Origin: Octopus sinensis
Lineage: Eukaryota
DNA: 64,000 nucleotides
NCBI RefSeq assembly: GCF_006345805.1
Contig: NC_043018.1
Location: 5,704,001 to 5,768,000 of the forward strand
Direction: 5' to 3'
Positions 144-62,851 of the stretch are shown here, one piece after another. The stretch's first letter is position 1; every line of letters begins with the position of its first letter. The notes below the pieces were generated by a model. It was not told the DNA's origin. It saw nothing but the letters and a program-made list of their open reading frames with translations, and searched no databases. The translations under genes were made by a program, and so were the position numbers.

Positions 144-578
144 CCTCCTATATATGCGAAAATGTATATATGTATATATTTATATGTGTATGTGAAAGTG
201 TATATTGTATATATCTATATGTGTGTGAATGTGTATATATTTATATATGTATGTGAATGTGTATATATGTATATTCATATGTGTGTGAATGTGTATATAT
301 GTATGTATTTAGATGTGTGTGTAAATGTGTATCACTGTCATTTAACGTCCACTTTCCATACTGGCATGGGGACAGTTTGATTGAGGTCTGGCAAGCCGGG
401 AGGCCACACCAGGCTCCAATCCGATCTGGCAGTGTATATATGTATATATGTGTGTAAATGTGTATACATGTATATATTTATGTGTGTGTAAATGTGTAAA
501 TATGTATATATTTATATATGTGTGTGAATGTGTATATATGTATGTATTTATGTGTGTATGAATGAGTATATATGTATT

Positions 579-785
579 CTTGTTTCAGTCATTTGACTGT
601 GGCCATGCTGGAGTACCACCTTTAGTCAAGCAAATCGACCCCAGGACTTATTCTTTGTAAACCTAGAACTTATTCTATCAGTCTCTTTTGCCGAAATGCT
701 AAGTTATGGGAACATAAGCGCACCAGTTTCAGTTATCAAGCAATTTTGTGGGGGAAAAACACAGACACACGAACATATATATGCA
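579..785 (-). mobile_element. SINE family B, 3' half (5' half at about 3560-3690; separated by the 867-3549 block)
   Basis: Matches the family B end cttgtttcagtcatttgactg..ggccatgctggag found many times in the window. Confidence 0.75.
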
Positions 786-866
786 ACAATGGTGCATCAG
801 CATAGCTGCAGCACTGAGCCGAAACTACAGAAAAAAATAACATATGTAAATATATATATATATATA

Positions 867-1817
867 TTGATTCCGAATTCCTTTTGCCAAGACTGTCCGT
901 AAACGAAGTGATCCCAAGATAAGAAATCCTTGAACTTTAATTCATCCCGTATTTCTATTTATTATTATTATTTATTAATTATTATTATTCTGATCCCCCT
1001 AGACGCCACTCTGTTTACTATTTCAGCCTCGCCTCGTTTTTGCATATTCTGTATAATTCACTAGTTATCGTTATAGATATTTAAGATCTATTCTCCCTTA
1101 CAGGGCTGATAGAAATTGGCTGCCGATTCTTCGCGCCCTTCTCTCCCCCTCTTTTTACATTGTCTGTCTGGACTCCTATGCATACTTAAGCTAGTAACCT
1201 GCCTCATTCTTGATTCCGAATTCCTTTTGCCAAGACTGTCCGTAAACGAAGTGATCCCAAGATAAGAAATCCTTGAACTTTAATTCATCCCGTATTCTAT
1301 TTATTATTATTATTTATTAATTATTATTATTCTGATCCTCCTAGACGCCACTCTGTTTACTATTTCAGCCTCGCCTCGTTTTTGCATATTCTGTATAATT
1401 CACTAGTTATCGTATAGATATTTAAGATCTATTCTCCCTTACAGGGCTGATAGAAATTGGCTGCCGATTCTTCGCGCCTTCTCTCCCCCTCTTTTTACAT
1501 TGTCTGTCTGGACTCCATGCATACTTAAGCTAGTAACCTGCCTCATTCTTGATTCCGAATTCCTTTTGCCAAGACTGTCCGTAAACGAAGTGATCCCAAG
1601 ATAAGAAATCCTTGAACTTTAATTCATCCCGTATTTCTATTTATTATTATTATTTATTAATTATTATTATTCTGATCCCCCAAGACGCCACTCTGTTTAC
1701 TATTTCAGCCTCGCCTCGTTTTTGCATATTCTGTATAATTCACTAGTTATCGTTATAGATATTTAAGATCTATTCTCCCTTACAGGGCTGATAGAAGTTG
1801 GCTGCCGATTCTTCGCG
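867..1817 (+). repeat. Tandem array of a ~341-bp unit, about 2.8 copies (array Z)
   Basis: Unit start ttgattccgaattcc at 867, 1210 and 1549. Copies nearly identical apart from 1-bp indels. Third copy breaks at TCTTCGCG. Confidence 0.95.
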
Positions 1818-3549
1818 GCGCGCCCGCCCTACCCACCCCCACCACCAATACCGAATATCTCTATTTGCTCCAACTATACCGGATGTCGTTTCTCCCACCA
1901 CCATTATAGGTGTCTACTCTTTGAACCCCCCTCTTCAATACGCTATTTCACCATGCATTACCCCTCTCTCGATATCCTACGTTCTACTTGCCTAGAACCT
2001 GTCCTCTGAACCACCCCTCCCACTGGTGTTCCCCTATATTTCTGCACCCCCCACCACCATTATAGGTGTCTACTCTTTGAACCCCCCTCTTCAATACGCT
2101 ATTTCACCATGCATTACCCCTCTCTCGATATCCTACGTTCTACTTGCCTAGAACCTGTCCTCTGAACCACCCCTCCCACTGGTGCTCCCCTATATTCTGC
2201 ACCCCCCCCCACCACCATTATAGGTGTCTACTCTTTGAACCCCCCTCTTCAATACGCTATTTCACCATGCATTACCCCTCTCTCGATATCCTACGTTCTA
2301 CTTGCCTAGAACCTGTCCTCTGAACCACCCCTCCCACTGGTGCTCCCATATATTTCTGCACCCCCCCACTACCATTATAGGTGTCTACTCTTTGAACCCC
2401 CCTCTTCAATACGCTATTTACCATGCATTACCCCTCTCTCGATATCCTACGTTCTACTTGCCTAGAACTGTCCTCTGAACCACCCCTCCCACTGGTGCTC
2501 CCCTATATTTCTGCACACCCCCACCACCATATAGGTGTCTACTATTTGAAGCCCCCTCTTCAATACGCTATTCACCATGCATTACCCCTCTCTCGATATC
2601 CTACGTTCTACTTGCCTAGAACCTGTCCTCTGAACCACCCCTCCCACTGGTGTTCCCCTATATTTCTGCACCCCCCACCACCATTATAGGTGTCTACTCT
2701 TTGAACCCCCCTCTTCAATACGCTATTTCACCATGCATTACCCCTCTCTCGATATCCTACGTTCTACTTGCCTAGAACCTGTCCTCTGAACCACCCCTCC
2801 CACTGGTGCTCCCCTATATTCTGCACCCCCCCCCACCACCATTATAGGTGTCTACTCTTTGAACCCCCCTCTTCAATACGCTATTTCACCATGCATTACC
2901 CCTCTCTCGATATCCTACGTTCTACTTGCCTAGAACCTGTCCTCTGAACCACCCCTCCCACTGGTGCTCCCATATATTTCTGCACCCCCCCACTACCATT
3001 ATAGGTGTCTACTCTTTGAACCCCCCTCTTCAATACGCTATTTCACCATGCATTACCCCTCTCTCGATATCCTACGTTCTACTTGCCTAGAACCTGTCCT
3101 CTGAACCACCCCTCCCACTGGTGCTCCCCTATATTTCTGCACACCCCCACCACCATTATAGGTGTCTACTATTTGAAGCCCCCTCTTCAATACGCTATTT
3201 CACCATGCATTACCCCTCTCTCGGTATCCTACGTTCTACTTGCCTAGTACCTGTCCTCTGAACCATCCCTCCCACTGGTGCTCCCCTATATTTCTGCACC
3301 CCCCCCCATAAAAAGCACCATCCGAACGTGGCCGATGCCAGACCCCTCTGGCACCTGTGCAGGTGGCACGTAAAAAACACCCACTACACTCGCGGAGTGG
3401 TTGGCGTTAGGAAGGGCATCCAGCTGTAGAAACATTGCCAGACTAGACTGGAGCCTGGGGCAGTCCCGAGCTCCCCAGACCCCCGGTCGAAACCGTCCAA
3501 CCCGTGCTAGCGCGGAAAACGGACGTTAAATGATGATGATGATGATGAT
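1818..3549 (+). mobile_element. RTE-tailed non-autonomous element: C-rich head + U array + RTE 3' UTR tail ending in (GAT)n
   Basis: Head 1818-1895. Tail 3308-3549 ends ...gcggaaaacggacgttaaa(tga)n. Inverted sister copy at 60798-61295. Confidence 0.8.
1896..3307 (+). repeat. Tandem array of a ~156-bp unit, 9 copies (array U), inside an RTE-tailed element
   Basis: ccattataggtgtctac recurs at about 1901, 2057, 2215, 2372, 2527, 2681, 2839, 2996 and 3153. Confidence 0.95.
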
Positions 3550-3930
3550 ATATATATATATATATGATGGGCTTCTTTCAGCTTCCATCTACCAAATCCA
3601 CTCACAAGACTTTGGTCGGCCCAAGGCTATAGAAGACACTTGCCCAAGGTACCACACAGTAAGACTGAACCTGGAACCATGTGGTTGATATATGTGACAG
3701 TGTATATATATGTATACATTTATATATGCATTTGTGTATAACATTATCTGGACATCACGTGATCATTGTAAAAATGAGCATCACCAGTCTTCAGTGAAAA
3801 ACATGTCTGGCCAAGGAGAAATACCACCTTACTTAGACACAGGTGAAGGTTGGCAGCAGGAAGAGCATCGAGCCATTGAAAAACCTGCCTCAACAAATTT
3901 CATGTAACCCATGCAAACATGAGAAAATGG

Positions 3931-7443: not shown

Positions 7444-8020
7444 TCATCATCATCATTTAACGTCCGCTTTCCATGCTAGCATGGGTTGGACAATTTGACT
7501 GAGGTCTGGCGAACCAGATGGCTGCCCCAGGCTCCAATCTGATCTGGCAGAGTTTCTACAGCTGGATGCCCTTCCTAACACCAACCACTCCAAGAGTGTA
7601 GTGGGTGCTTTTACATGCCACCAGCACGAGGGCCAGTTTGGTGGTACTGGCAACGGCCACGCCCAAATGGTGCTTTTTATGTGCCACCTGCACAGGAGCC
7701 AGTCCAGCGGCACTGGCGACAACCTTGCTCGAATGTTTCGTGTGCCACCAGCATAAGTGCTAGTAAGGCGACGCGGTAACGCTCACGCTCGAATGGTGTG
7801 TTTAACATTTCATCAGCATGAAGGCCAGCTTGTTGCTCTGGCAACGATCTCACTCATATGGTACTCTTAGTGCTCCACTAGCAACGGATGCCAGTCACTG
7901 AGTTTGATTTTGACTTCGATTTCACTTGCCTCAAATGGTCTTCACAAGCAGAGTTTAGTGTCCAATGAAGAAAAGCACGCATAAGTGGACTGGTTACACC
8001 CCTAGCATAGGCCACAAGGT
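7444..8020 (-). mobile_element. 5'-truncated RTE LINE, 3' UTR only (family C)
   Basis: Colinear with the 3' UTR of the ORF-bearing RTE at 17117-18303; (ATC)n tail. Confidence 0.85.
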
Positions 8021-15407: not shown

Positions 15408-16260
15408 CATCATCATCGTTTAACGTCCGTTTTCCGTGCTAGCAAAGGTTGGATGGTTCAACCAGGATCTGGGAAGCCAGGAGGCTGCACCAGACTCCAG
15501 TCTGATCTAGCAGTGTTTCTACAGCTGGATGCCCTTCCTAACGCCAGCCACTCCGTGAGTGTAGTGGGTGCTTTTTACGTGCCACTAGCACAGATGCCAG
15601 GGGAGGCTGGCAGCGGCCACGATCAGTTGGTGCGTTTTACGTGCCACCGGCACAGAAGCCAGTCAAGGTGGTGCTGGCATCGACCACATTCGGATGGTGC
15701 TTTTTACGTATCACCAGCACAGGTATCGTAACTACAATTTCCATTTGATATTTATTTTGATATTGATGTACTTGACTCAATAGGTCTCCTCAAGCACAGC
15801 AGGTCACCCTACGATCCAAGGTAAGAAATATAGAAATATATTCTGTAATCCAAGGTACTTTGGATGGGCTGGGGCCATGCGAAACTGGTGCAGGAAGCAG
15901 CCCGGGTCTTTGCAGTCACAGCATATCTCCAGAGATCTCGGTCGTTCATCATTGCCAATCATCATCATCAACATCATTTAACATCTGTTTTCCATGCTGG
16001 CATGGGTTGGACAGTTTGCTCAAGGTTACAATCTGATTTGGCATGGTCTCTACAGCTTCATGCTATTTCCTAACACCAACTTTTTAAGTGCCTTTTAAGT
16101 GTCACTGGCACAGTTGCCAGTTACAAAACACCAGCACCAACCATGACTGTGATCCCACTTGGCTTGCTATACTGCCAAAGTTCTCAGTCACTCGTCACTG
16201 CCTCCATGGGGCCCAAAATTCAAAGGGCGCTTCTTTTTACATGCCACCAGCACAGGTGAA
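15408..16260 (-). mobile_element. Two adjacent RTE 3' fragments (family C subfamilies)
   Basis: (ATC)n tails at about 15408 and 15960. First copy includes the ORF end DRDLWRYAVTAKTR. Confidence 0.75.
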
Positions 16261-16304: not shown

Positions 16305-16482
16305 CTTTTACTTGTTTCAGTCATTTGACTGTGACCATGCAGGAGCACCGCCTTTTAGTTGAGCAAATCGACCCCAGGACTTATTCTTTGTAAACCTAGT
16401 ACTTATTCTATCAGTCTTTTTTGGTTGTCAAGCGATGTTGGTGGGGACAAATACAGACACACAAACATATACACACACATAC

Positions 16483-16519
<37 letters not shown>

Positions 16520-16685
16520 ATACACACATATATATACGACAGGCTTCTTTCAATTTCCATCTACCAAATCCACTCACAAGGCTTTGGTCGGCCCGAGGTT
16601 ATAGTAGAAGACACTATCCCAAGGTGCCATGCAGTGGGACTGAATCCGGAACCATGTGGTTCGTAAGCAAGCTACTTACCACATG
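16305..16685 (-). mobile_element. SINE family B
   Basis: Consensus match. Confidence 0.85.
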
Positions 16686-17116
16686 GGCCAGTGTATTTAT
16701 ATATATATATCTTTTCTACTCTAGGCTCAAGGCCTGAAATTTTGGGGGAAGGAGCCAAGTCAATTATATCGACCCCAGTATGTAATTGGTATTTAATTTA
16801 TTGACCATGAAAGGGTGAAAGGCAAAGTTGAACTCGGTGGAATTTGAACTCAGAATGTAAAGACAGACACATACATATACACACAATTATGGCAAAGGTA
16901 AACAATATGCACTCCCTAGTGTTTAGGGTTAGGGTTACACCGAAAATGGGTGCTGTGCATATTCTTTATCTTCACCCACAATTATATAATATATATTTAT
17001 GTTATAGAAATATATTCAATGAGAGAGAGAGTGAGAGAGAGAAAAAGAGATACATAGACCCATATATCTATAAACATGTGTGCGCATGTATTCATGTACA
17101 TATATATATATATATA

Positions 17117-18303
17117 TCATCATCATCATCATCGTTTAACGTCCGCTTTCCATGCTAGCATGAGTTGGACGATTTGACTGAGGACTGGCGAACCAGATGG
17201 CCGCACCAGGCTCCAATCTTGATCTGGCAGAGTTTCAACAGCTGGATGCCCTTCCTAACGCCAACCACTCCAAGAGTGTAGTGGGTGCTTTTATGTGCTA
17301 CTGGCACGAGGGCCAGTCAGGCGGTACTGGCAACGCCCACGTTCAAATGGTGTTTTTTTACGTGCCACCGGCACAGGAACCAGTCTAGTGGCATTGGCAA
17401 CGACCTCGCTCGAATGTTTTCCACGTGCCAGTAAGGCAACGCTGGTAACGATCACGCTTGAATGGTGCATTTTACGTGCCACCGGCATGGAAGCCAGAGC
17501 TAATGCTCTGGCAATGATCGTTCTTGGATGGTGCTCTTAGCACTCCACTAGCACAGAAGCCAGTCATCGAATTTGATTTCGATTTCAACTTCACTTGCCT
17601 CAACAGGTCTTCACAAGCAGAGTTTAGTATCCAATGAAGGAAAGGTATGCATAAGTGGGCTAGTTACACCCCTGGCATAGGCCACGCAGTTATGGTCTCA
17701 TTTGGCTTGCCAGGTCTTCTCAAGCGCAGCATATTTCCAAAAGTCTCAGTCACCAGTCATTGCCTCGGTGAGGCCTAATGTTTGAAGGTCTTGCTTCACC
17801 ACTTCATCTCAGGTCTTCCTGGGTCTACCTCTTCCACAGGTTCCCTCAACCACTAGGGTGTGGCACTTTTTCACACAGCTATCCTCATCCATTCTCGCCA
17901 CATGACCATACCAGCACAGTTGTCTCTCTTGCACACTACACCTGATGCTTTTCTCTCAAGGTACTTACACTCTGTCGAGTATGCACGCTGACATTACACA
18001 TCCACCGGATCATACTGGTTTCATTCCTTGTGAGCTTACGCATGTCCTCAGCAGTCATGACCCATTTTTCACTGCCATGTAGCATGGCTGTTCATACACA
18101 TGCATCATACAGTCTACCTTTCACTCTGAGCGAGAGGCCTTTTGTCACCAGCAGAGGCAAGAGCCCTCTGAACTTTGCCCAGACTATTCTTATTCTAGCA
18201 GCTACACTTTCAGCACACCCTCCCCCGCTACTGACGGGGTCACCTAGGTAACAGAAGCTATCAGCTACTTCTAGTTTTTCTCCCTGGAATGTAACAGAAA
18301 TCG
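17117..18303 (-). mobile_element. 5'-truncated RTE-clade LINE: degenerate ORF C-terminus (about 17698-18303) plus ~580-bp 3' UTR
   Basis: EKLEVADSFCYLGD..GGGCAESVAARIRIVWAKFRGLLPLL..KGRLYDACV..MLHGSEKW..WYGHVARM..GRGRP, stop at 17698-17700, then the 3' UTR shared by all family C copies and a (GAT)n tail. Confidence 0.9.
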
Positions 18304-24389: not shown

Positions 24390-25654
24390 AATTTTGGAAG
24401 CAGGAGAGGTTGAAAAGGCCTCCCTAGCAGATATTCGGGCATTCCTCAGAAAGGAGCTCCTGATGCTGATGAAAATTGGGACCCAAAGAAGGAGACGAAA
24501 GGGGAGGACAAGGGAGAGAGACCTGCGTCCCTGGCTAACCCCCACAAATTGATAAAGCAGCTCCTCGGTCAGAAGACGACCGGTCGATTGGCTTGTTCCA
24601 AGGAGTATCTACCAGTGTTTAGAACGACAGTGGTAGATACCAACCACTGAACTCGTGCAAGGCATTTATAACGTCACTTCAACCAACATCATCATTGTTC
24701 GACCGTGGTCGAGACAATGGAATTTACCATGCTACGCCAGACTTCACGATCCATCATGTCATTACGGAGGTCTTGTTGCTGGATGCCTGTATCCCCGGAG
24801 ATTACATCAGGGAAGGAGAGTGTGTGCCCTCTGGTATTGCGAGTAGATGGCTTCCAGAGGAGAAGAGTAGAAATTACCTCGTTTTCAGCTCTACAACAAT
24901 GTCCAGCAAACTGGACTCTTCTACCTTTCACAAGAGATGATACAGGTGGTAATTTCCCATATATTTGTACTTTGGTTGGGTGACACTTCCACGAGAGATT
25001 TTGAGCTCTCATAAGGAGGCAAGTGTAAGTTCCATCCAACCGCCTCTCAAGCTTCTTTGATAACGTCCAGGTTTCTGAGCCATATAGTGGAATTCAATTT
25101 GGAGGAACCTTGCTTGAAAGAACTAAAAGCGGTAGTAAGAAGAGTAAGATCTAACTCAGATTTGGGTCCGAGTGGAATCCTATACAAGGTCTATAAGAAC
25201 TGCCCAAAGTTACTCTATTGGCTGCAGGATGCCCTGAAGATAATCTGAGAAGAGGAGAGGTCGCACGTGTGGAGATATGCTGAAGTGATATACATACCCA
25301 AAGGGAGAGAACTGAGAATATCGACCAATTTTGCATTATCCCTTTGTTGAGAATGGAGTGCGAGATTTTCTTCGGCATTGTATTTGAGAGACTCGCCAAC
25401 TTTCTGCTCAGCAATAATTACATCGACATTCGGCATGTCAGTACAGACGTGGGACACATCGACAGTCTCTAGTTGCCTTGAACACAAAGCTGTGATAATC
25501 CTGCTCATTAGGGAGACACAAAAAGAAAAGGGGGAACTTGGTTGTGTTGCGGCTGAACCTGGCCAACGCCTCTACCTCGATCCCACATAAACTGGTTGAA
25601 TTTGTACTAGAGAGAGGAGAAGCGTGAAGGAGAGAGAAACAGAAATAGACAGAC

Positions 25655-26489: not shown

Positions 26490-26910
26490 CATATATATTT
26501 CTTTACTGCCCACAAGGGGCCAAACATAGAGGGGACAAACAAGGACAAACAAAGGGATTAAGTCAATTACATCGACCCCAGTGCGAAACTGGTACTTTAT
26601 TTATCGACCCCGAAAGGATGAAAGGCAAACTTGACCTCGGAGGAATTTGAACTCAGAACGTAACGACAGACGAAATGCCTATTTCTTTATTGCCTACAAG
26701 GGGCTAAACACAGAGAGGACTAACAAGGGCAGACAAAGGGATTAAGTCGATTATATCGACCCCAGTGCGTAACTGGTACTTATTTAATCGACCCCGAAAG
26801 GATGAAAGGCAAAGTCGACCTCGGCGGAATTTGAACTCAGAACGTAGCGGCAGACGAAATACCGCTAAGCATTTCGCCCGGCGCGCTAACGTTTCTGCCA
26901 GCTCGCCGCC
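26490..26910 (-). mobile_element. SINE A dimer
   Basis: Two bodies joined at aaagaaatag|gcatttc, one tRNA-like head. Confidence 0.85.
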
Positions 26911-28619: not shown

Positions 28620-31600
28620 GTTACTGTGTTTGTATCGTGTGTGTCTATATATATTTATATATTTTTATAGATTATATATGTATATTTATATATTTTTTAC
28701 ATATATCTTTATATGTTTGTATAAATATATATTTGGTGTGATTGATCATATAGAGTATATATATGGATCTATATATATATGTATATATATATTTATAGAT
28801 ATATATATTATAGTATATAGTATTATTATATTTATATGTATATATATAGTTATATGTATATATAGTATATTAATGTATATATATAGTATTTATATGTTAT
28901 AGATAGAGGGTATATATATTGATGGTATATATAGAATATTTTATATATTATATGTATATATATATATATATTTATATGTATAGATATAGGAGTTAGATGT
29001 ATAGTATATATGTATATTATATAGTGATATGGTTATAGATATATATATATATATATTATAGATATAGTTTAAGATAGTATATATATATTTATATGGATAT
29101 TATATTATATTGATATATATGGATATATATATTTATATATATATGAATATAGGATATTTATGATATAGTGTATATATATGTATATATATATGTATATATA
29201 TATTATAGATTAGATGTATATTGTAGTATTTATATATATGTATATATTTGATTATATATATGTATATATATATTTATATATATATGTATTATATTAGATG
29301 TATATAATATGTATATATAGTATGTTATATATATGTAATATTATGTATGTATATAGATAATATATAGATATGTATATATATAGGTATATATATAAGGGTA
29401 TATATATATAATATATAAGGTATATATATATTGTATATATATGTATATATATTTTATATATATATGGATATTATATTTATAGATATATGTAGTGGATATA
29501 TATATATATAGGATATATGTTATATATATATTTATATATATATGTATAGATAATTATATATAGTTACTAGATATATTTATATATATGTATAGGATATATT
29601 GTTACATATATGTAGATAATATGTTATATATATGTATATATAGATATATATATTGTATATATATTGTATAGAGATAGTATGATAGAGGTATATATATATT
29701 TATATAGATGTAGAGTTATTATATGTATATTCTATATATGTAGATATATATATATATATATGGATTATTTATATATATGTATATATAGATTTAATATATG
29801 ATATTTAATATGTATATGCATAGATTGTAATATAAGAGGTATATTTATTATATGTATATATATATTTAATATAGGTATGTTATAGATGTATATATATATT
29901 TATATATATGTATATATTTATTTATATATAGGATATTTACTATATAGGTATATTTATTTATAGTAGTGAGATTTATATATATGTATATAGATTTATTATT
30001 TTATATATGTAGATATCTATGTATATATATATGTATATATATGTATATATATTTTATATATATGTTATATATATTTATATATATGGTATATATAATTTAT
30101 ATATATGTATATATATATTATATATATGTATATATAGTATTTTATATATATGTATATATATATTGATATATATGTATATATATATTTATATATATATGTA
30201 TATATATATTATATATATGTATATATAGATATTTATATATATTGTAGTATATCTTATAAGATATTATATATATATTTATATATATGTTAGATATATATAT
30301 TTATATGTATATATATATTTATATATATAGATATACAAATATTATATATGTATATATATATTGTATATTTATATATATACTTATACATATATAATATGTA
30401 TATATATATTATATAATATATACATATATATATATGTATATATATATTTATATATATGTATATATATATTTATATATATATCTTATACATATATTTAGAT
30501 AGATGTATATATATATTTATATATATATAATATACATATATATGTATATATATATTTAGATATAGTATATATATAGATTATATATAGATTATAATATATA
30601 CATATATATATATGTATATATATGATTATTATATAGTATTATATATATTTATATATATGTATAGAGATATATATATATATACATATTATGTATATATTAT
30701 TTATATATATGTATATATATATTTATATATAATATATATACATAATATCTATGTATATATATATTTATATATATGTATAGATATATGTATATATATATGA
30801 TATATATATTTATATATATGTATTATATATTTATATATATGTATAGATATATTTATATATATGTATAGATATATTTATATTATATATACATGTATTATAT
30901 AGTGTATATATATATTTATACATGGATATATATATATGTATATATATATTTATATATAGGTATATATATAGATATATATATATACATAGATATATATGAT
31001 ATGTGTATTAGAGATTTATACAGGTATATATATTATGTATTATATAATTTATATATATGTATATATCTATGTATATATATGTATATAATATTATATGTAT
31101 ATATATATTTAATATAATATATATATATTAAATATATATATAGTATATATCTATATATATGTATATGTATATTTATATATATGTAATATATAGATATATA
31201 TAGTAGATTGTATATTATTAGTATATATGTATTATATAGAGATAATATATATATATATGTATTATGGATATTTATATATATGTATATATATAATATATAT
31301 ATATATATGTATATGTATATTTATATATATGTATATATATATGTATATATGTATATATATATGTAATATATATATTTATATATGTATATATTATATATAT
31401 ATGTATATATATATTTAATATAGTATATATATATGTATATATATGGATATATAATTTATATATGTATATATATATTTATATATATATATTTATATATATG
31501 TATATATATATATTTATATGTATATATATATATTTATATGTATATATATATATTTATATATATGTATATATATATTATATATATTTATATTATATTTTTA

Positions 31601-34285
31601 TATTATATATATATTTATATGTATATATATATATTTAATATATGTATATATATATATTATATATATGTATATCTATATATTTATATATATGTATATATAT
31701 ATAGTTATATGTATATATTATATTTATATATATATATGTATATATATTATATATATGTATATATATTTTATATATATGTATATATATTATATATATGTAT
31801 ATATATATATATATATGTATTATATTTATATATATGTATATATATATTTATATATATGTATATATATATTTATATATATGTATATATATATTTATATATA
31901 TGTATATATATATTTTATTATATGTATATGTATATTTATATATATGTATATGTATATTTATATATATGTATATGTATATTTATATATATGTATATGTATA
32001 TTTATATATATGTATATATATATTTATATATATGTATATATATATTTATATATATGTATATGTATATTTATATATATGTATATATATATTTATATATATG
32101 TATATATATATTATATATATGTATATATATATTTATATATATTGATATATATTTATATATATGTATATGTATATTTATATATATGTATATGTATATTTAT
32201 ATATATGTATATTATGTATATGTATATTTATATATTGTATAGTATATTTATATATATGTATATGTTATATTATATATATGTATATGTATATTTATATATA
32301 TGTATATGTATTATTTATATATATGTATATGTATATTATATATATGTATATGTTATTTATATATGTATATATTATTTATATATATGTATATGTATATTTA
32401 TATATATGTATATGTATATTTATATATGTATATGTATATTTATATATATGTATATGTATATTTATATATATGTATATGTATATTTATATATATGTATATG
32501 TATATTTATATATATGTATATGTATATTTATATATGTATATGTATATGTATATTTATATATATGTATATGTATATTTATATATATGTATATGTATATATA
32601 TATATGTATATGTATATTTTATATATATGTTATGTATATTTATATATATGTATATGTATATGTTTATAATATGTATATGTATATTTATATATATGTATAT
32701 GTTATTTATATATGTATACATGTATATTTATAATAGTATATTTATATATATGTATAATGTATATTTATATATAGTATACATGTATATTTATATATGTATT
32801 TATATTATATATATATATAGTAGGTATGTATATATTATATATGTGTATATTTATAAATATACATATATATATTCATATACACATATATATTTGTATATAT
32901 ATACATATATTTAAATATGTATATATATATCTAAATATGTATATATATATTTATATATGTATATATATGTGTGTGTGTGTGTGTGTGAATGTATATATAT
33001 GTGTGTGTATATATATACATATATGTGTGTGTGTATGTATATATATATATATGTGTTTATGTATATATATATATGTGTTTATGTATATATATATATGTGT
33101 TTATGTATATATATATATATGTGTTTATGTATATATATATATGTGTTTATGTATATAATATATGTGTTATGTTATATTATATATATGTGTTTATGTATAT
33201 ATATATATGTGTTTATGTATATATATATATATGTGTTTATGTATATATATATATATGTGTTTATGTATATATATATGTGTTTATGTATATATATATATAT
33301 GTGTTTATGTATATATATATATATGTGTATGTATAATATATGTGTTTATGTATATATATATATATATGTGTTTATGTATATATTATAATGTGTTTTGTAT
33401 ATATATATATATAGTGTTTATGTATATATATGTGTTTATGTATATATTGGTGTGTATATTTATGTGTGTGTGTATTTTTATGTGTGTGTGTTGGTATATT
33501 TATGTGTCTATATTTTTATGTGTGTGTGTGTATATTTTTATGGTGTGTGTGTATTTATATATGTGTTGTGTGTGTATATTAATATGTATATATGTGTGTG
33601 TGTGTATATTTTTATTATGTAATAGGTGTGTGTGTGTATTTATATATGTATATATGGGTGTGTAATTTATATATGTATATATGTGTGTGTGTATTTTATA
33701 TATGTATATGTGTGTGTGATATTTATATATGTATATGTATAGTGTTTGTTTTTTTGTGTGTATATTTATAATGTATATGTTGGTGTATATTTATATGTAT
33801 ATGTATATGTGTGTGTATATATATATATGTATATATGTGTGTGTGTGATGTGTATATTTATATATGTATATGTGTGTGTGTATATTTATATATGTATATA
33901 TGTGTGTGTGTGTATATTTATATATGTATATATGTGTGTGTGTATATTTATATATGTATATATGTGTGTGTGTATATTTATATATGTATATATATGTGTG
34001 TGTATGTATATTTATATATGTATATATATATATGTGTGTATGTATATATATATATGTATATATGTGTGTATGTATGTAGTATGTATGGTGTATGTATGTA
34101 TATATGTATGTGTGTATGTATGTATATATGTATATATATGTATATATATATATGTATATTTATGTGTATATATATGTGTATTATATTATGTATATGTATA
34201 TATTAGTGTATATTATATATGTATATATTTATGTATATATATATATGTATATATTATGTATTATATATATATGTATATATTTATG

Positions 34286-34317
<32 letters not shown>

Positions 34318-35100
34318 GATATATATATGATATATTTATATATGTTTTAAGTTTATATATTATATTAGGTATATATATATATGTATATATATATATGTAT
34401 ATATTTATGTATATATATATGTATATATTTATGTATATATGATTGATTGATTCTAGTTTCAGCTCACGAGCTGTGGCCATGCTGGGGCACCGCCATATAT
34501 ATATTTATATATGTATGTATATATATATTGATGTATGTATATATATATTGATGTATGTATATATATATTGATATATGTATATATATATATATATTTATAT
34601 ATGTATGTATATTGATATATATATATATGTATATTGATATATATATGTATGTATATTGATATATATATGTATGTATATTGATATATATATGTATGTATAT
34701 TGATATATATATGTATGTATATTGATATATGTATGTATATGTATATTGATATATGTATGTATATGTATATTGATATATGTATGTATATGTATATTGATAT
34801 ATGTATGTATATGTATATTGATATATGTATGTATATATATATTGATATATGTATGTATATATATATTGATATATGTATGTATATATATATATTTATATGT
34901 GTGTATATATTGATATATGTATGTATATATATATTTATATGTGTGTATATATTTATATATGTATGTATATATATATTTATATGTGGTATATATTTATATA
35001 TGTATGTATATATATTTAGATATATATATATTTGTATATATATATTTATACATGTATATATGTGTGTGTGTGTGTATATATATGTATGTGTGTGTGTTGT
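28620..35100. repeat. ~6.5-kb AT-rich low-complexity/minisatellite field
   Basis: Continuous TA-based sequence with sub-arrays such as tatatttatatatatgtatatg, tgtgtttatgtatatatata and attgatatatatgtatgtat. Confidence 0.97.
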
Positions 35101-38644: not shown

Positions 38645-39115
38645 GCTAACCGGCTTCCGTGCTAGTGGCACATAAAAGGTACCATTCGAGTGTGATCGTT
38701 ACCAGCATTGCCTTACTGGCACTTGTGCCCCATGCTAGTAGGGTGCTAAGAGCACCATCTGAGCGTGATCGTTGCCAGAGTGGCTAACTGGCTTCCGTGC
38801 CAGTGGCATGTAAGAGGCACCATTCGAGTGGGAACGATACCAGCATCGCCTTACTGGCACCTGCACCGTTGGCATGTGTAAAAAGATTCGAGCGAGGTCA
38901 TTGCCAGTACCACCTGAATGGCCCCCGTGCCGGTGGCACGTAAAAGCACCCACTACACTCTCAGAGTGGTTGGCGTTAGGAAGTGCATCCAGCTGTAGAA
39001 ACCCTGCCAGATCAAGACTGGAGCCTGCTGCAGCCATCTGGTTCACCAGCCCTCAGTCAAATCGTCCAACCCATGCTAGCATGGAAAGCGGACGTTAAAC
39101 GATGATGATGATGAT
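38645..39115 (+). mobile_element. RTE 3' UTR fragment (family C)
   Basis: Internal ~65-bp modules and a gcggacgttaaac(gat)n tail. Confidence 0.85.
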
Positions 39116-40442: not shown

Positions 40443-40875
40443 TTGGGGAAAGGGAATTTTGTTGTTCAAACTTTCAATGGCTCAGAAACCTGGATGTTAT
40501 CAAAGAAGCTTGAGAGGCGGTTGGATGGAACTTACACTCGCCTCCTTATGAGAGCTCAAAATCTCTTGTGGAAGCATCATCCAACCAAAGTACAACTATA
40601 TGGGAAACTACCACCTGTATCATCTCTTGTGAAAGGTAGAAGAGTCCAGTTTGCCGGACATTGTTGTAGAGCTGAAAACGAGGTAATTTCTACTCTTCTC
40701 CTCTGGAAGCCATCTGCTCGCAATACCAGAGTGCGCACACTCTCCTACCCTAATGTAATCTCCAGGGATACAGGCATCCAGCAACAGAACCTCTGTAATG
40801 CTATGATGGACCGTGAAGTCTGGCGTAACATGGTAAATTCCATTGTCTCGACCACGGTCGAACAATGATGATGAT
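40443..40875 (+). mobile_element. RTE-clade LINE 3' fragment
   Basis: GSETWMLSKKLERRLDGTYTRLL..RRVQFAGHC..DREVWR..TTVEQ* followed by (TGA)n. Confidence 0.88.
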
Positions 40876-47090: not shown

Positions 47091-47499
47091 TGCAATGTAT
47101 GAGGGAATTTGGCATCACTTTTGTCTCCAACAATTCGGTGCGACACCAGTGCAGAATCACCTCCAAGACGTCTGCGTTGGCTGGGTCATGCTCTCCATCG
47201 TCAACCAGGAGAATTCATCTACGAAGCAATTGCCCCAGCTCCCCTTCAGGGTTGGCGAAAGCGATGTGGTGGACAACGAAAAACCTGGCTGATGACCGTC
47301 AAGGCTGATCTGGAACCCAACCTAGGCCCCCATGTCTACGGCGTTCACCACTGGAATAGGGAGTGGTTGGAGATCACGCTGTCGTTAGCCTCAAATCGCC
47401 AGGCCTGGTCGGCGTTTGTGAGAGATGCAGCATTGAGGATGAATGAAGCCAGCTCAACCTACCCCGGGTGAATGCTGTCTCAAGACAAGAAAAGAAGAA
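47091..47499 (+). mobile_element. RTE-clade LINE 3' fragment (distinct lineage) with 12-bp TSD, nested in another RTE tail
   Basis: RRLRWLGHALHR..GWRKRCGGQRKTW..DLEP.LGP.VYG..WNREW..LASNRQAW; TSD agacatgaaaaa at 47079-47090 and 47500-47511. Confidence 0.85.
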
Positions 47500-48504: not shown

Positions 48505-48890
48505 TTATTTACTTGTTTCAGTCATTTGACTGCGGCCATGCTGGAGCACCGCCTTTAGTTGAGCAAATCGACCCCGGGACTTATTCTTTGTAAGCCCAGT
48601 ACTTATTCTATCGGTCTCTTTTGCCGAACACACCAGCATCGGTTGTCAAGCAATGCTAGGGGGACAAACACAGACAAACAAACACATACACACACACATT
48701 TATATATATATATATACATATATATGACAGGCTTCTTTCAGTTTCCGTCTACCAAATCCACTCACAAGGCATTGATCGGCCCGGTGCTATAGCAGAAGAC
48801 ACTTGCCCAAGATGCCACGCAGTGGGACTGAACCCAGAACCATGTGGTTGGTTAGCAAGCTACTTACCACACAGCCACTCCTGCGCCTAT
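48505..48890 (-). mobile_element. SINE family B
   Basis: Consensus match with an internal deletion. Confidence 0.85.
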
Positions 48891-49404: not shown

Positions 49405-50042
49405 ACCTATTTCTTTATTACCCACCAGGGGCTAAACATAGAGGGGACAAACAAAGACAGACATAGGTATTAAGTCGATTACATCGACCCCAGTACGTAA
49501 CTGGTACTTAATTTATCAACCCCGAAAAAGCACCATCCATACGTGGCCGATGCCAGCACTGCCTTGACTGGCTTCCGTGTCGGTGGCACATAAAAAGCAC
49601 CAACAGTTCGTGGCTGTAGCCAGCCTATCCTGGCACGTAAAAAGCACCATCCATACGTGGCCGATGCCAGTGTTCCCTTGACTGGCTTCTGTGTCGGTGG
49701 CACATAAAAACCACCAACCGATCGTGGTCGTTGCCAGCATCCCCTGGCATGTAAAAAGCACCCACTACACTCACGGAGTGGTTGGCGTTAAGAAGGGCAT
49801 CCAGCTGTAGAAACAATGCCAGATCAGACTGGAGCCTGGTGCAGCCTCCTGGCTTCCCAGACCCCAGTCGAACCGTCCAACCCATGCTAGCATGGAAAGC
49901 GGACGTTAAACGATGATGATGATGATGAAAGGATGAAAGACAAAGTTGACCTCGGCGGAATTTGAACTCACAACTTAACGACAGACGAAATACGGCTATG
50001 CATTTCGCCTGGCGTGCTAACGTTTCTGCCAGCTCGCTGCCT
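49405..50042. mobile_element. SINE A (minus) split by an RTE 3' UTR insertion (plus, about 49528-49926)
   Basis: SINE A breaks at ccccgaaa and resumes at aggatgaaag after the (GAT)n tail. Confidence 0.8.
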
Positions 50043-52956: not shown

Positions 52957-53056
52957 NNNNNNNNNNNNNNNNNNNNNNNNNNNNNNNNNNNNNNNNNNNN
53001 NNNNNNNNNNNNNNNNNNNNNNNNNNNNNNNNNNNNNNNNNNNNNNNNNNNNNNNN
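52957..53056. other. Assembly gap (100 N)
   Basis: Exactly 100 Ns, typical of a scaffold join of unknown size. Confidence 0.99.
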
Positions 53057-53059
53057 TTT

Positions 53060-53610
53060 AGTGGAGGGGTGGCAGTCGACTAGATTAACCCCAGTAAGCA
53101 ACTGGTACTTCATTTATCAACCCTGAAAGGATGAAAGGCAAAGTCGACCTTGGCGAAATTTGAACTCAGAACATAAAGCCTGATGAAATACCTATTTCTT
53201 TACTACCCACAAGGGGTTAAACACAGAGAGGACAAACAAGGACAGATAAACGGATTAAGTCGATTATATCGACCCCAGTGCTTAACTGGTACTTATTTAA
53301 TCGACCCCGAAAGGATGAAAGGCAAAATCGACCTCAATGGAATTTGAACTCAGAGCGTAAAGACAGTCGAAATACGTATTTCTTTACTACCCACAAGGGG
53401 CTAAACACAGATGGAACAAACAAGGACAGATAAATGGATTAAGTCGATTATATCGACCCCAGTGCGTAACTGGTACTTATTTAATCGACCCCGAAAGGAT
53501 GAAAGGCAAAGTTGACCTCAGCGGAATTTGAACTCAGAACGTAATGGCAGACGAAATACCGCTAAGCATTTCGCCCGGCGTGCTAACGATTCTGCCAGCT
53601 TGCTGCCTTA
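53060..53610 (-). mobile_element. SINE A multimer (head plus about three bodies)
   Basis: Junctions gaaatac(c/g)tatttc at about 53190 and 53378. Confidence 0.88.
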
Positions 53611-55300: not shown

Positions 55301-55555
55301 AGGCAGAGTTTGTGGGATTATGATTACCTGAGGTTAACTCAGTGTTATATTTAGTACAAGCCTTGGTGTTAGGACTGATGTTAGTTGTGGTAGTGAGGGA
55401 ACCATTGGGCAGGATGGGGGTGGGGGTGAGGATCAGAGACCACTGTTGAAAACCACAGAAAAAGAAGAAATAAATGACAACTCATAGATTTACTTGATCA
55501 GGTTGATGTGGAACCAAACAACAACAACCACAAGCGTGAAATGTAGGAATACTAT

Positions 55556-58709: not shown

Positions 58710-59172
58710 AACCCATGGCCTCTACCTGGGATGTAGCCAGCCCACTTATGCATACCTTTCCTTCTTGGGAAACAAAACTCTGCTTGCGAAGACCTGTTGA
58801 GGCAAGTGAAATCGAAATCGCTCAAAAATCAATGGAAATTGTAGTTGTGATACCAGTGCCGGTGGCATGTAAAAGAACCATCTGAATGTGGTCATTGCCA
58901 GCACCGTCCCAACTGGCCTCCATGCCGGTGGCACGGAAAAAGCACCAACCGATCGTGGCCGTTGCCAGCCTCACCTGGTACCTGTGCTGGTGGCATGTAC
59001 CTCACCTGGTACCTGTGCTGGAGTGGTTGGCATTAGGAAGGGCATCCAGCTGTAGAAACACTGTCAGATCAGACTGGGCCTGGTGTAGCCTCCTGGCTTC
59101 CTAGACACCAGTCGAACTGTCCAACCCATGCTAGCATGGAAAGTGGACGTTAAACGATGACGATGATGATGA
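58710..59172 (+). mobile_element. RTE 3' UTR fragment (family C)
   Basis: Colinear with the 17117-17700 UTR; (GAT)n tail. Confidence 0.85.
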
Positions 59173-60056: not shown

Positions 60057-60184
60057 TATATATATAATACCTGTACATCACCTCCAAACCTTCTAATATA
60101 TATATCATCATCATCATTTAGCGTTCCGTTTCCATGCCTAAATGATGATGATGATATATATATATAATATATATATATATATAT

Positions 60185-60659: not shown

Positions 60660-60797
60660 TTGTATGTAAAAAATATTTTAATCTGTTATTTCTTTAATAT
60701 GCTAGGCCACTGGTTTTAATTGATTAATATCAATTTCTACCCTATTCAATTTTATATATATGTATATATATATATATATTATATATATATATATATA

Positions 60798-61295
60798 TCA
60801 TCATCATCATCATCATCATGTTTAACGTCCGTTTTCCGCGCTAGCACGGGTTGGACGGTTTCGACCGGGGTCTGGGGAGCTCGCGGACTGCCCCAGGCTC
60901 CAGTCTAGTCTGGCAGTGTTTCTAAGCTGGATGCCCTCCTAACGCCAACACTCCGCGAGTGTAGTGGGTGTTTTTTACGTGCCACTGCACAGGTGCCAGG
61001 AGGGGTATGGCATCGGCCACGTTCGGATGGTGCTTTTTTATGGGGGGGGGTTGCAAAATATAGGGGACGCACCAGTGGGGAGGAGTGGTTCAGAGAAATG
61101 ATGACAGGTTCTAGGCAAGTAGAACGTAGGGATATCGAGGAGAGGGGTAATGCATGGTGAAATAGCGTATTGAAGCGGGGGGTTCGAGAGAGTAGACACC
61201 TATAATGGTGGTGGGAGAGCGACATCCGGTATAGATGGAGCACAAATATAGAGATATCGGTATTGATGGTGGGGGGGTGGGCAGGGTGGGTGCAC
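60798..61295 (-). mobile_element. Sister copy of the RTE-tailed head+U element with a single U module
   Basis: Reverse complement of head 1818-1895, one U unit and tail 3308-3549, including the same CpG-rich tail variants. Confidence 0.85.
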
Positions 61296-61880
61296 CGCGA
61301 AGATACGAAGTTTGATTTTAGACGAATGAAGATAGATAGAGACATTAGATAGATAGAGAAATTTGATAAATAGTTAGACAGATAGAGAAACATAAATAAA
61401 TGGTAACCGAAGTAAGTGAAAATTAAGCATTCAACTTATTGCATCAGGACTAAGCTTGGAGATGAATGAGGAGAGAGGGAGAGAGAGAGAGAGAGAAACA
61501 TGTGTTATAGGGGGACATACTTCAGATGGCGCGAAGATACGAAGTTTGATTTTAGACGAATGAAGATAGATAGATAGATAGAGAATAGATAGATAGAGAA
61601 ATTTGATAAATAGTTAGACAGATAGAGAAAATAAATAAATGGTAACCGAAGTGAAAATTAAGCATTCAACTTATCTGCACTCAGGACTACAGCTTGTAGA
61701 TGAATGAGAGAGTGAGAGAGAGAGAGAGAGAAATATGTGTATTAGAGGGGACATACTCAAGATGGCGCGAAGGATACGAAGTTTGATTTTAGACGAATGA
61801 AGATAGATAGATAGATAGATAGATAAAAGAATTAGATAGATAGAGAAATTGATAAATAGTTAGACAGATAGAGAAACATA
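61296..61880. repeat. Tandem array of a ~235-bp unit, about 2.5 copies (array Y)
   Basis: cgcgaag(g)atacgaagtttgattttagacg at 61296, 61530 and 61766. Confidence 0.9.
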
Positions 61881-61955
61881 AGAGGGAGTAATCCGGCGTA
61901 GATGGGGAAACCAGTGTTACGGTATTGGTGGTGGGGGGAGGGAGGGCGGGCGAAC

Positions 61956-62430
61956 CGCGCTGGGAGAAGATGGGGTTTTAGGCGGCCAGAAGAAGACAGG
62001 ATTGAGATGAAATGCTTTGCGGTGGTGTGAATAAGTTTTTGTGAGTGTGAAAGTTTTTATGCTTCAGCTAGCATTTGCGACGAAAAGACAACGATATGGA
62101 ATACCATAAACAATAAGGCTTGCAAAAACAAAAAAGAGAGGAAACAGGTCGGGAACTTAGTGATGTTTTTCATCCTGCGTATTGGCTAGCTGGTTGTGTG
62201 GAAAGCGGTGAAGGTGAGATATATTACGAGAGAGAGAGAGAGAGAGAGAGACAGTGAAAACAGAGGGAGAACCGACACCACATAGCGAGAGGAGAGAGCG
62301 ACATAGTGACACCGCGCATTGGGAGAAGATGGGGTTTAGGCGGCAGAAAAGAAGACAGGATTGAGATTGAAATGCTTTGCGGTGGTGTGAATAAGTTTTT
62401 GTGAGTGAAAGTTTTTATGCTTCAGTAGCA
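61956..62430. repeat. ~118-bp direct repeat (X) at 61956 and 62313
   Basis: cgcg..gggagaagatggggttt..gacaggattgaga..gcttcag(c)tagca occurs twice. Confidence 0.85.
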
Positions 62431-62492
62431 TATCAGAAATATTAAATTTCTAAATATCTCATAGAGACATGTATGGTGGTGGAGCGATAGAA

Positions 62493-62774: not shown

Positions 62775-62809
<35 letters not shown>

Positions 62810-62851
62810 CAATAGAAAAAATGAAAAATAAACAAGAAAATTAATTCTTAC

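What the first reader, a model, noticed from the sequence alone, without database searches (positions are those of the whole stretch)
867..3549. RTE-tailed element whose head is joined to unrelated tandem arrays at one 8-mer (TCTTCGCG)
Seen: the same head + 156-bp U module + young RTE tail occurs here and inverted at 60798-61295. Both copies begin at the same point. Immediately 5' of each lies a tandem array (341-bp Z here, 235-bp Y there). Z and Y share no homology I can see except TCTTCGCGCC, and both arrays break exactly after TCTTCGCG where the head starts. The whole Z+head+U+tail block lies between (TA)n tracts that split one SINE B, so it looks like a single insertion. Established: non-LTR RTs such as R2 can jump templates at the RNA 5' end, and rodent L1 swaps tandem 5' monomers. 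Inference: either homology-guided template jumping onto small, possibly circular templates copied 2-3 times round, or CGCG-specific targeting of arrays, or exchangeable 5' monomer arrays. Any of these would be an unusual array-capturing retroelement.
Basis: partly seen in the sequence, partly recalled or inferred. Interest (0 to 1): 0.8.

Follow-up and report, generated by a model that had tools for sequence, protein, structure and literature searches.

The report
Modular tandem-array retroposon joined at CGCG
Two young copies of a non-coding, LINE-dependent retroposon are built from unrelated tandem arrays stitched together by an 80-base C-rich linker, always at a CGCG next to a quadruplex-prone tract; it looks like an invertebrate counterpart of primate SVA elements, but two loci cannot prove how the joints are made.

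Summary
The window holds three heads, not two.

- **Head position:** the head is an internal linker, not the element's start. Locus 2 reads X–head'–Y–head–U–tail.
- **U module:** U is a 9-copy array with a 4-unit higher-order repeat at locus 1. Locus 2 has one copy.
- **Single insertion:** the joined flanks of locus 1 align in one piece to intact SINE B copies, so 867-3549 arrived as one block.
- **Module relatedness:** Z, Y, X and U share no significant homology, but all are G-poor on the same strand.
- **Quadruplex motifs:** the heads carry three of the window's five canonical G-quadruplex motifs, on the antisense strand, 4-6 nt from each joint.
- **Known RNAs:** no ribozyme, tRNA or snRNA was found.

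Best reading (0.42): an SVA-like composite retroposon whose modules recombine by microhomology-guided template switching.

- **Rivals still open:** in-place expansion and L1-like monomer arrays remain possible.
- **Rivals disfavoured:** targeted insertion into arrays and small circular templates.

No other copies could be fetched, so genome-wide tests remain undone.

The parts
579..850 (+). 5' half of the interrupted SINE B (target of the locus 1 insertion)
   Evidence: Joined with 3566-3690, it aligns in one HSP to intact copies at 11358-10954, 16311-16661 and 48512-48850.
851..866 (.). (TA)n at the 5' edge of insertion 1; target tract and possible target-site duplication
   Evidence: Read directly. 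A matching (TA)n lies at 3550-3565.
867..1817 (+). Z array: 340-bp unit x 2.8, ending at ...GATTCTTCGCG. The 5' end falls at an arbitrary phase of the unit.
   Evidence: TRF. Units differ by 0.3-1.1% substitutions. No other copy in the window. G content 13.5%.
1814..1893 (+). Head copy 1: CGCGG, then a C-tract (1823-1840), then a core resembling the start of U, ending in CTCCC
   Evidence: Three-way alignment. nhmmer E = 2e-23. Canonical G4 motif on the antisense strand. Among the highest G4Hunter-type scores in the window.
1894..3308 (+). U array: 157-bp unit x 9.0, organised as a 4-unit (~624 bp) higher-order repeat
   Evidence: TRF. u2=u6 and u3=u7 are identical; u4=u8 has 0 substitutions and 2 gap columns; u1~u5~u9. 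Unit borders are C6-C9 runs.
3309..3530 (+). SINE/LINE-type 3' tail: one ~62-nt module plus two conserved hairpins
   Evidence: About nine further copies in the window at 80-89% identity. Hairpins conserved across 9 copies, with one compensatory pair. Module count.
3531..3549 (+). (TGA)n terminal microsatellite of the tail
   Evidence: Read directly. Every tail copy has the same terminus.
3566..3690 (+). 3' half of the interrupted SINE B
60798..60820 (-). (ATG)n terminus of locus 2, abutting a (TA)n tract
60821..61038 (-). Tail, copy 2
   Evidence: 0.9% substitutions and 7 one-nt indels against copy 1.
61041..61210 (-). Single U unit, copy 2
   Evidence: 2.6% substitutions.
61211..61299 (-). 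Head copy 2, with CGCGG at 61299-61295. Its CpGs have decayed (GCGCGCCCG became GTGCACCCA).
   Evidence: G4 motif at 61271-61290.
61296..61881 (-). Y array: 235-bp unit x 2.4. It runs from the 3' end of head' to the CGCG of head 2.
   Evidence: TRF. Junction alignment. G content 7.8%.
61886..61960 (-). Head' (third head), complete from CGCGG to CTCCCTC and followed by Y instead of U
   Evidence: blastn 78%. nhmmer E = 4e-18. Alignment. G4 motif at 61933-61950.
61976..62435 (-). X array: 360-bp unit x 1.3. The last unit is cut at GCGCGG(T).
   Evidence: Self-matches 62431-62335 to 62075-61976 and 62040-61954 to 62400-62311. 2.7% substitutions between copies.
62460..62482 (-). Possible fourth, truncated U/head-like start (CCACCACCATACATGTCTCTAT) just 5' of X
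   Evidence: Outside the elements, CCACCACCA occurs at only four loci in the window. Weak evidence.

Best explanation
These are two young copies of a non-autonomous, non-coding composite retroposon. A LINE mobilises it through its 3' tail, which has two hairpins and a (TGA)n terminus.

The body is a chain of pyrimidine-rich modules, each prone to forming a tandem array: Z, Y, X and U. An ~80-nt head links them. The head consists of CGCGG, a C-tract whose complement is a canonical G-quadruplex motif, a core resembling the start of U, and CTCCC.

Proposed mechanism (inferred):
1. The reverse transcriptase copies tail, then U, then head.
2. The new cDNA ends in ...CCGCG-3'. Folding of the G-rich cDNA just behind it may free that end.
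3. The freed end re-anneals to a CGCG in the array of a sibling RNA and continues copying there.
4. At locus 2 this happened twice: head into Y, on through that RNA's own head', then into X.
5. The whole mosaic then integrates into a TA tract.
6. Array copy number changes afterwards, or in the master copy, by slippage at C-runs.

Shown: the anatomy, the three joints, the single-block insertion, the strand bias and the quadruplex motifs.

Inferred: that the joints were made at the RNA/cDNA stage, that the arrays come from sibling elements, and that the quadruplex plays any part.
For: - **Consistent joints:** three of three heads are preceded by a different array cut at CGCG(G).
- **Motif specificity:** TCTTCGCG occurs nowhere else in 64 kb.
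- **Single insertion:** locus 1 is one block inside a SINE B.
- **No nested-insertion signature:** no array sequence lies 3' of either tail.
- **Native-looking Y boundary:** head' is complete, and Y begins within 2 nt of the point where U begins after head. Y therefore behaves as the native array of a head'-bearing sibling.
- **Shared composition:** Z, Y, X, U and head have 8-13.5% G on the sense strand, against 19% for the window. Outside the two loci such skew is found at only about 20 short stretches.
- **Quadruplex motifs:** three of the five canonical G4 motifs in the window are in the heads, 4-6 nt from the joints. They are among the highest G4Hunter-type scores in the window.
- **Variable array:** U has 9 copies at one locus and 1 at the other, with a higher-order repeat.
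- **Mosaic ancestry:** divergence between the loci rises from 3' to 5' (tail 0.9%, U 2.6%, head 8.9%). This fits a mosaic history rather than uniform decay.
- **Family habit:** relatives with the same tail carry 2-4 tandem ~65-nt modules, so forming arrays is typical of this family.
- **Literature:** template switching by LINE reverse transcriptases is the accepted route for SINE module exchange in molluscs (PMC4758252). Template jumping is a measured activity of a non-LTR reverse transcriptase (PMC8857657).
Against: - Only two loci and three joints were seen, and no other copy could be fetched.
- Sibling elements of the form head'-Y(n)-tail or head-Z(n)-tail were not observed.
- A 4-5 nt microhomology is short.
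- TCTT before and CC after the CGCG are shared by Z and Y only. The model does not explain this (chance is about 1/4096 if CGCG is taken as given).
- Nothing shows that the head's CGCGG is an RNA 5' end or a preferred switch point.
- DNA-level mechanisms could produce the same joints.
- The link to RTE rests on a short 3' motif shared with a 120-aa ORF fragment. That fragment has no Pfam match or database relative.
Confidence: 0.42

Rival explanations
1. In-place expansion. The family has one long modular master (...X-head-Y-head-U-tail, with a Z variant). Each array arose where it now sits. A polymerase stalled at the quadruplex-prone tract, and its nascent end slipped back to an upstream CGCG and recopied whatever lay 5' of the head. 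Nothing was captured.
For: - G4 motifs sit 4-6 nt from every joint, and C-runs sit at every U border.
- A CGCG-to-CGCG slip reproduces the internal Z junction TCTT-CGCG-CCC exactly (sequence).
- The 4-unit block duplication in U is typical of DNA-level array remodelling. SVA VNTR remodelling is attributed to the DNA level in PMC4432496.
Against: - A single slip predicts whole-number copies, with unrelated sequence 5' of the first CGCG. X (1.3 copies) and Y (2.4 copies) start at arbitrary phases, so extra events are needed.
- It does not explain why the sequence 5' of the head differs completely between two copies whose tails differ by 0.9%.
Confidence: 0.25
2. L1-style promoter monomers. Z, Y and X are exchangeable 5' monomer arrays that drive transcription. 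The head is the non-monomeric tether at which the last monomer is always truncated.
For: - The last unit is cut at a fixed point and the first at a variable point.
- Unrelated monomer types sit on closely related bodies.
- This matches the mouse L1 layout of monomers plus tether (PMC9022269).
Against: - Locus 2 has two tiers, array-head-array-head, which a single tether does not predict.
- The element is non-coding.
- Promoter activity could not be tested.
Confidence: 0.15
3. Targeted insertion plus 5' transduction. A head-U-tail element inserts preferentially at CGCG inside existing genomic arrays. A read-through transcript from the array then moved array and element together.
For: - Microhomology at 5' junctions is known for LINE integration (from my own knowledge, not tested here).
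- Both tails abut TA tracts, so the endonuclease does have a target preference.
Against: - No array remnant lies 3' of either tail.
- The observed target is (TA)n, not CGCG.
- All three arrays share the element's G-poor bias on the same strand, which random genomic arrays would not.
- It needs the same coincidence three times.
Confidence: 0.07
4. Rolling reverse transcription of small circular or self-cleaving RNAs (retrozyme-like), entered from the head's 5' end.
For: - Unit sizes of 235-360 nt are in the range of metazoan retrozyme repeats (from my own knowledge).
- Fixed entry points and arbitrary exit points fit the array phases.
- Rolling-circle reverse transcription does exist in a bacterial defence system (PMC11100668).
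Against: - No hammerhead, HDV-like, twister or other ribozyme family matches on either strand at E <= 10.
- G content of 8-13.5% leaves little capacity for paired structure.
- Y abuts a complete head', so its template was linear and carried a head.
Confidence: 0.05
5. Assembly artefact. The arrays or their copy numbers come from mis-assembly.
For: - The window has a 100-N gap.
- Locus 2 has many 1-nt indels.
- u2-u4 and u6-u8 carry no substitutions.
Against: - Three different arrays join at the same motif at two loci in opposite orientations.
- The arrays are only 0.5-1.4 kb, well within long-read length.
- Units carry their own substitutions.
Confidence: 0.04

Closest known systems
VNTR composite retrotransposons of hominoids (SVA, LAVA, PVA, FVA)
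   Same: - Non-autonomous, non-coding and mobilised by a LINE.
- A C-rich 5' linker region, a central tandem array whose copy number differs between copies and shows ordered substructure, and a 3' module that supplies the mobilisation signal.
- Family members share some modules and swap others (PMC4432496, PMC7353768).
   Different: - No sequence relation to these families.
- Units are 157-360 bp rather than 30-50 bp.
- The sense strand is pyrimidine-rich and G-poor.
- The tail is a stem-loop plus (TGA)n rather than poly(A), so the partner is not L1.
- Several unrelated arrays are chained by a repeated linker.
- PMC4432496 describes VNTR composites as specific to hominoids.
Mouse/rat L1 5' monomer arrays with tether
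   Same: - Tandem ~200-bp units at the 5' side.
- The last unit is cut at a fixed point and joined to a non-repeated tether.
- Unrelated monomer types sit on related bodies (PMC9022269).
   Different: - The element here is non-coding.
- The 'tether' occurs twice in one copy, with arrays on both sides.
- Promoter function is unknown.
Module exchange in mollusc SINEs, and chimeric retrocopies made by template switching or RNA ligation
   Same: - Mosaic elements are assembled from modules at sharp joints.
- A short (~70-80 nt) conserved module is shared by otherwise unrelated elements (LP-SINE heads, PMC4758252).
- Non-LTR reverse transcriptases jump templates (PMC8857657).
- Chimeric RNAs can also form by ligation before reverse transcription (PMC6789731).
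   Different: - The partners here are tandem arrays, not small cellular RNAs.
- The same microhomology recurs at each joint.
- The conserved module is internal, not terminal.
Metazoan retrozymes (tandem repeats carrying hammerhead ribozymes that yield circular RNAs)
   Same: Tandem units of a few hundred nucleotides in an invertebrate genome, linked to retroelement activity (from my own knowledge).
   Different: No hammerhead or any other self-cleaving ribozyme was detected in Z, Y, X, U or head.

Membership tests
Non-LTR, LINE-dependent non-autonomous retroposon (SINE in the broad sense) | A 3' tail shared with a partner LINE, ending in a simple repeat | tested here: inconclusive
   - The tail ends in GGACGTTAAA(TGA)n.
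- An ORF fragment at 47109-47471 is followed by GGACGTTAAAACAATTATGACGATGAT.
- That ORF has no Pfam match and no database relative, so the RTE assignment is unverified.
- Nine tail copies share conserved hairpins.
Non-LTR, LINE-dependent non-autonomous retroposon (SINE in the broad sense) | A discrete insertion with a reconstructable empty site or target-site duplication | tested here: met
   The joined flanks of locus 1 align in one HSP to intact SINE B copies. (TA)n lies on both sides, so the exact duplication cannot be delimited. The boundaries of locus 2 are unresolved.
Non-LTR, LINE-dependent non-autonomous retroposon (SINE in the broad sense) | A head derived from tRNA, 5S, 7SL or snRNA, with a pol III promoter | tested here: not met
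   No Rfam family matches in 500-3800 or 60500-62900 at E <= 10, apart from hairpin-type hits outside the element. It is therefore not a classical SINE.
VNTR composite retrotransposons (SVA/LAVA type) | A central tandem array whose copy number varies between copies | tested here: met
   U has 9.0 copies at one locus and 1 at the other, with a 4-unit higher-order repeat.
VNTR composite retrotransposons (SVA/LAVA type) | The defining modules: (CCCTCT)n, Alu-like region, SINE-R or L1 3' end, poly(A) | tested here: not met
   None is present; the sequence was read directly. The element is an analogue, not a member.
L1-type 5' monomer promoter arrays | Tandem 5' units with the last one cut at a fixed point and joined to a tether | tested here: met
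   Three of three arrays end at CGCG(G).
L1-type 5' monomer promoter arrays | Monomers have promoter activity and contain the transcription start | not testable with these tools
   No expression data or eukaryotic promoter model was available.
Retrozymes / ribozyme-bearing tandem repeats | A self-cleaving ribozyme in each unit | tested here: not met
   Rfam cmscan with relaxed filters, E <= 10, both strands: none found.
Nested insertion into a pre-existing array | The array continues on the 3' side of the inserted element | tested here: not met
   blastn of Z, Y and X units against the window finds no copy 3' of either tail.

The most novel reading that the evidence does not exclude
A family of array-chaining retroposons in an invertebrate. 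Its short linker encodes a G-quadruplex in the nascent cDNA next to a palindromic CGCG. The quadruplex frees the cDNA end, and the CGCG guides it onto arrays of sibling RNAs. The element therefore serially captures and shuffles whole minisatellite arrays during reverse transcription. That would be a sequence-programmed template-switch site, and an independent, RTE-driven origin of SVA-like composites.
Probability: 0.25. Interest if true: 0.75.

Novelty: new variant of a known kind. Interest (0 to 1): 0.5.

Why it matters
VNTR-composite retroposons are described as a hominoid speciality (PMC4432496). A structurally analogous family in a mollusc, driven by a different LINE type, would show that this architecture evolves repeatedly.

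The recurring joint, CGCG next to a quadruplex-prone tract, is a concrete and testable candidate for a programmed template-switch or slippage site. How LINE and SINE 5' modules and monomer arrays are exchanged is still unexplained, for mouse L1 as well.

Such elements would also spread minisatellites through a genome. This may help explain the very large number of unclassified SINE families reported in Octopus vulgaris (893 recently active families, PMC13282606). That the window comes from an octopod is my recollection of its SINEs and was not verified.

Tried and rejected
1. **Fetching more copies failed.**
   - A protein search with the 162-aa ORF spanning Y-head-U-tail found nothing.
   - The neighbouring GH79 heparanase-like exon found only relatives at 55% identity or less, so the source genome and its close relatives are not in that collection.
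   - The RTE-like ORF found nothing.
   - Two metagenome scans, one with a U 20-mer and one with a tail 31-mer, found nothing.
   - Sequence strings were not found in the paper library.
2. **Ribozyme, tRNA or snRNA origin of head or array units:** no Rfam match.
3. **Hidden homology among Z, Y, X and U:** none beyond (CT)n. Only the start of U against the head core reaches z = 3.5.
4. **Array units ending in degenerate tail sequence:** no similarity.
5. **Nested insertion:** no array remnants 3' of the tails.
6. **Confirming the partner LINE as RTE:** Pfam gave no hit on four LINE C-terminal ORFs, and the fragment at 47109 is 5'-truncated.
7. **Dating locus 2 from array identity (88%):** withdrawn. 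Most of the differences are 1-nt indels, and substitution divergence is only 0-4%.
8. **A fourth head 5' of X:** only a 23-nt match resembling the start of U, which is too weak to count.
Full report
**What is there**

Locus 1 lies on the plus strand. It reads, in order:
- (TA)n at 851-866;
- the Z array at 867-1817 (340-bp unit, 2.8 copies, 98% matches);
- an ~80-nt head at 1814/1818-1893;
- the U array at 1894-3308 (157-bp unit, 9.0 copies);
- a 3' tail at 3309-3530, ending in (TGA)n at 3531-3549;
- (TA)n at 3550-3565.

Locus 2 lies on the minus strand. From its 3' end it holds the same tail (61038-60821), one U unit (61210-61041) and the head (61299-61211). The Y array precedes the head (61881-61296; 235-bp unit, 2.4 copies).

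Both arrays stop after TCTTCGCG. That 8-mer occurs five times in the 64 kb, all in Z or Y.

A third head lies directly 5' of the Y array. It spans 61960-61886 on the minus strand and is 78% identical to head 1 by blastn (nhmmer E = 4e-18). A third tandem array, X, precedes it at about 62435-61976, with a 360-bp unit and 1.3 copies.

A profile built from the three heads finds no further copy in the window.

The three junctions align as follows:
- Z: tcttCGCGGcgcgcccgccct
- Y: tcttCGCGGtgcacccaccct
- X: ccagCGCGGttcgcccgccct

Inside the arrays the same sites continue differently: cgcgCCCTTC in Z, cgcgCCATCT in Y and gcgcggTGTCAC in X. The common feature is therefore a 4-5 nt CGCG(G) overlap between the head's 5' end and each array. 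Only Z and Y share the TCTT.

The head also has a fixed 3' border. U follows head after CTCCC, and Y follows head' within 2 nt of the same point. The head is thus a discrete linker between arrays, not the start of the element. Locus 2 reads X–head'–Y–head–U–tail.

**Single insertion**

The flanks of locus 1, joined in a script, align in one HSP to intact SINE B copies at 11358-10954, 16311-16661 and 48512-48850. So 867-3549 entered the central TA tract of that SINE as one block, arrays included.

Neither tail is followed by Z, Y or X sequence. This argues against insertion of a head-U-tail element into an array that was already there.

The 5' limit of locus 2 is unresolved. A foldback with 131-nt arms (62461-62806) lies just upstream.

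**Nature of the modules**

- **Homology.** Rotated-unit local alignments with dinucleotide shuffles show no significant similarity among Z, Y, X and U apart from (CT)n runs. The head core does resemble the start of a U unit (31 of 38 positions, z = 3.5).
- **Composition.** All modules are G-poor on the element's sense strand (Z 13.5%, Y 7.8%, X 12.2%, U 10.4%, head 13.2%), against 19% for the window. Outside the two loci this skew occurs at only about 20 short stretches of the window. The arrays therefore look like the same kind of sequence as head and U, not like randomly captured genomic repeats.
- **Coding and known RNAs.** There is no long ORF. At E <= 10 Rfam gives no ribozyme, tRNA, 5S, 7SL or snRNA match in either locus.
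- **U substructure.** U has a 4-unit higher-order repeat. Units u2=u6 and u3=u7 are identical, u4=u8 shows no substitutions (2 gap columns), and u1~u5~u9. It holds a whole number of units at both loci.

**Quadruplex-prone tracts at the joints**

The canonical motif (G3+N1-7)3G3+ occurs five times in the window. Three of these are in the heads, on the strand antisense to the element, 4-6 nt from the CGCG joints: 1823-1840, 61271-61290 and 61933-61950.

In a G4Hunter-type scan the three heads (2.16-2.36) are among the highest scores in the window; only 55398-55441 (2.28) is comparable. The U unit borders and the U/tail joint also exceed 1.5. Every module border in the composite is therefore a C-run on the sense strand.

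**Age and relatedness**

| Comparison | Substitution divergence |
|---|---|
| Tail, locus 1 vs locus 2 | 0.9% |
| U, locus 1 vs locus 2 | 2.6% |
| Head, locus 1 vs locus 2 | 8.9% (6 of 7 changes are transitions, several at CpG) |
| Z units | 0.3-1.1% |
| Y units | 0-4% |
| X units | 2.7% |

The low percent identities reported for locus 2 come mostly from 1-nt indels, for example 7 in 216 nt of tail. These look like long-read consensus noise. Both copies are young. The rise in divergence from 3' to 5' points to a mosaic ancestry rather than uniform decay.

**Family context**

About nine other tails in the window (80-89% identical) belong to ordinary SINE-like elements. Most of those carry 2-4 tandem ~62-66-nt modules ahead of the tail core; loci 1 and 2, and one other copy at 52239, carry one. 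Tandem multiplication of modules is thus a habit of the whole family.

The tail has two conserved predicted hairpins. One pair changes in a compensatory way, from A-U to G-C, in the two young tails.

A 5'-truncated LINE ORF fragment (47109-47471) is followed by GGACGTTAAAACAATTATGACGATGAT, which resembles the tail terminus GGACGTTAAA(TGA)n. I could not confirm that it is an RTE, because it has no Pfam match and no database relative. That RTE elements end in short simple repeats is from my own knowledge.

Both young tails, a truncated tail at 60104-60142 and one ordinary copy (17116-17358) all abut (TA)n. This suggests a TA-tract target preference.

**Interpretation**

The best fit is an SVA-like composite retroposon whose modules are joined by microhomology-guided template switching at the head's CGCGG. 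The acceptors would be arrays carried by sibling RNAs. This accounts for:
- the fixed entry point and arbitrary exit phase of each array;
- the native-looking head'-Y border;
- the shared strand bias;
- the single-block insertion;
- the absence of array remnants 3' of the tails.

A role for the nascent cDNA quadruplex in freeing the ...CCGCG-3' end is my inference.

The main rival is in-place expansion by polymerase stalling at the quadruplex tract, with slip-back to an upstream CGCG. It reproduces the internal Z junction exactly. However, it needs extra events to explain the fractional X and Y arrays. It also does not explain why near-identical tails carry unrelated 5' sequence.

L1-like monomer arrays with a tether (PMC9022269) fit the fixed 3' truncation but not the two-tier locus 2. 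Targeted insertion and circular templates are disfavoured, as set out above.

Template switching as the route for SINE module exchange is the view in the literature (PMC4758252). Template jumping is a measured activity of a non-LTR reverse transcriptase (PMC8857657). RNA ligation before reverse transcription is a further known route to chimeras (PMC6789731), and I cannot exclude it.

**Limits**

- There are two loci and three joints in one window.
- No related DNA could be obtained from any collection.
- Frequency, sibling elements, transcription starts, empty alleles and read support are all untested.
- That the window is octopod rests on my recollection of its SINEs.

**Verdict**

The feature is real and regular. 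It is best filed as a new variant of a known kind, a VNTR-composite non-LTR retroposon with a recurrent and possibly programmed joint. Interest is moderate until a genome-wide census is done.

Noticed in passing
window 62848-63050 (minus strand): An exon of a GH79 heparanase-like gene (...[26 protein letters not shown], followed by a gtaag donor). The best database relatives are only 55% identical and carry PF03662. Locus 2 lies in the intron that follows, in the same orientation as the gene.
   Followed up: partly
window 62461-62806 and 60176-60668: Two foldback (MITE-like) elements with 131-nt arms (86-87% complementary) flank locus 2. The first gives spurious hits to plant miRNA hairpin models in Rfam.
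   Followed up: partly
window 60104-60185: A tail fragment truncated to about 30 nt, bracketed by inverted copies of its own (TGA)n(TA)n terminus. It faces the tail of locus 2 across a foldback. This may be a twin-priming or 5'-inversion relic, and it shows repeated hits of this family into one TA tract.
   Followed up: no
window 28646-35061: A 6.4-kb TA-rich, low-complexity tract (TRF period 2, about 70% matches).
   Followed up: no
window 52957-53056: A run of 100 N (an assembly gap) inside a SINE-rich stretch, next to a 184-bp tandem repeat at 53074-53560. That repeat also occurs at 26496-26860.
   Followed up: no
window 15567-15722, 49525-49762, 7614-7803, 17295-17538, 38748-38941, 58871-58997: Ordinary SINE-like elements with the same tail carry 2-4 tandem ~62-66-nt hairpin modules (GCACCAT...GGTGGCACGTAAAAA). 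Module multiplication is a general trait of this family.
   Followed up: partly
window 40443-40868 (+) and 24692-25039 (-): Two near-identical LINE C-terminal ORFs (...DREVWR.MVNSIVSTTVEQ). The plus-strand copy runs straight from its stop codon into (TGA)n. This could be an alternative partner LINE for (TGA)n-tailed elements. Pfam gives no match.
   Followed up: partly
window 63836-64000 (minus strand): The end of another LINE ORF, with a Cys/His motif (CNVCSRVCLSRAGFISHQRSRKC), followed by an (ATGT)n-type tail. It belongs to a different LINE family from the one that supplies the tail studied here.
   Followed up: no
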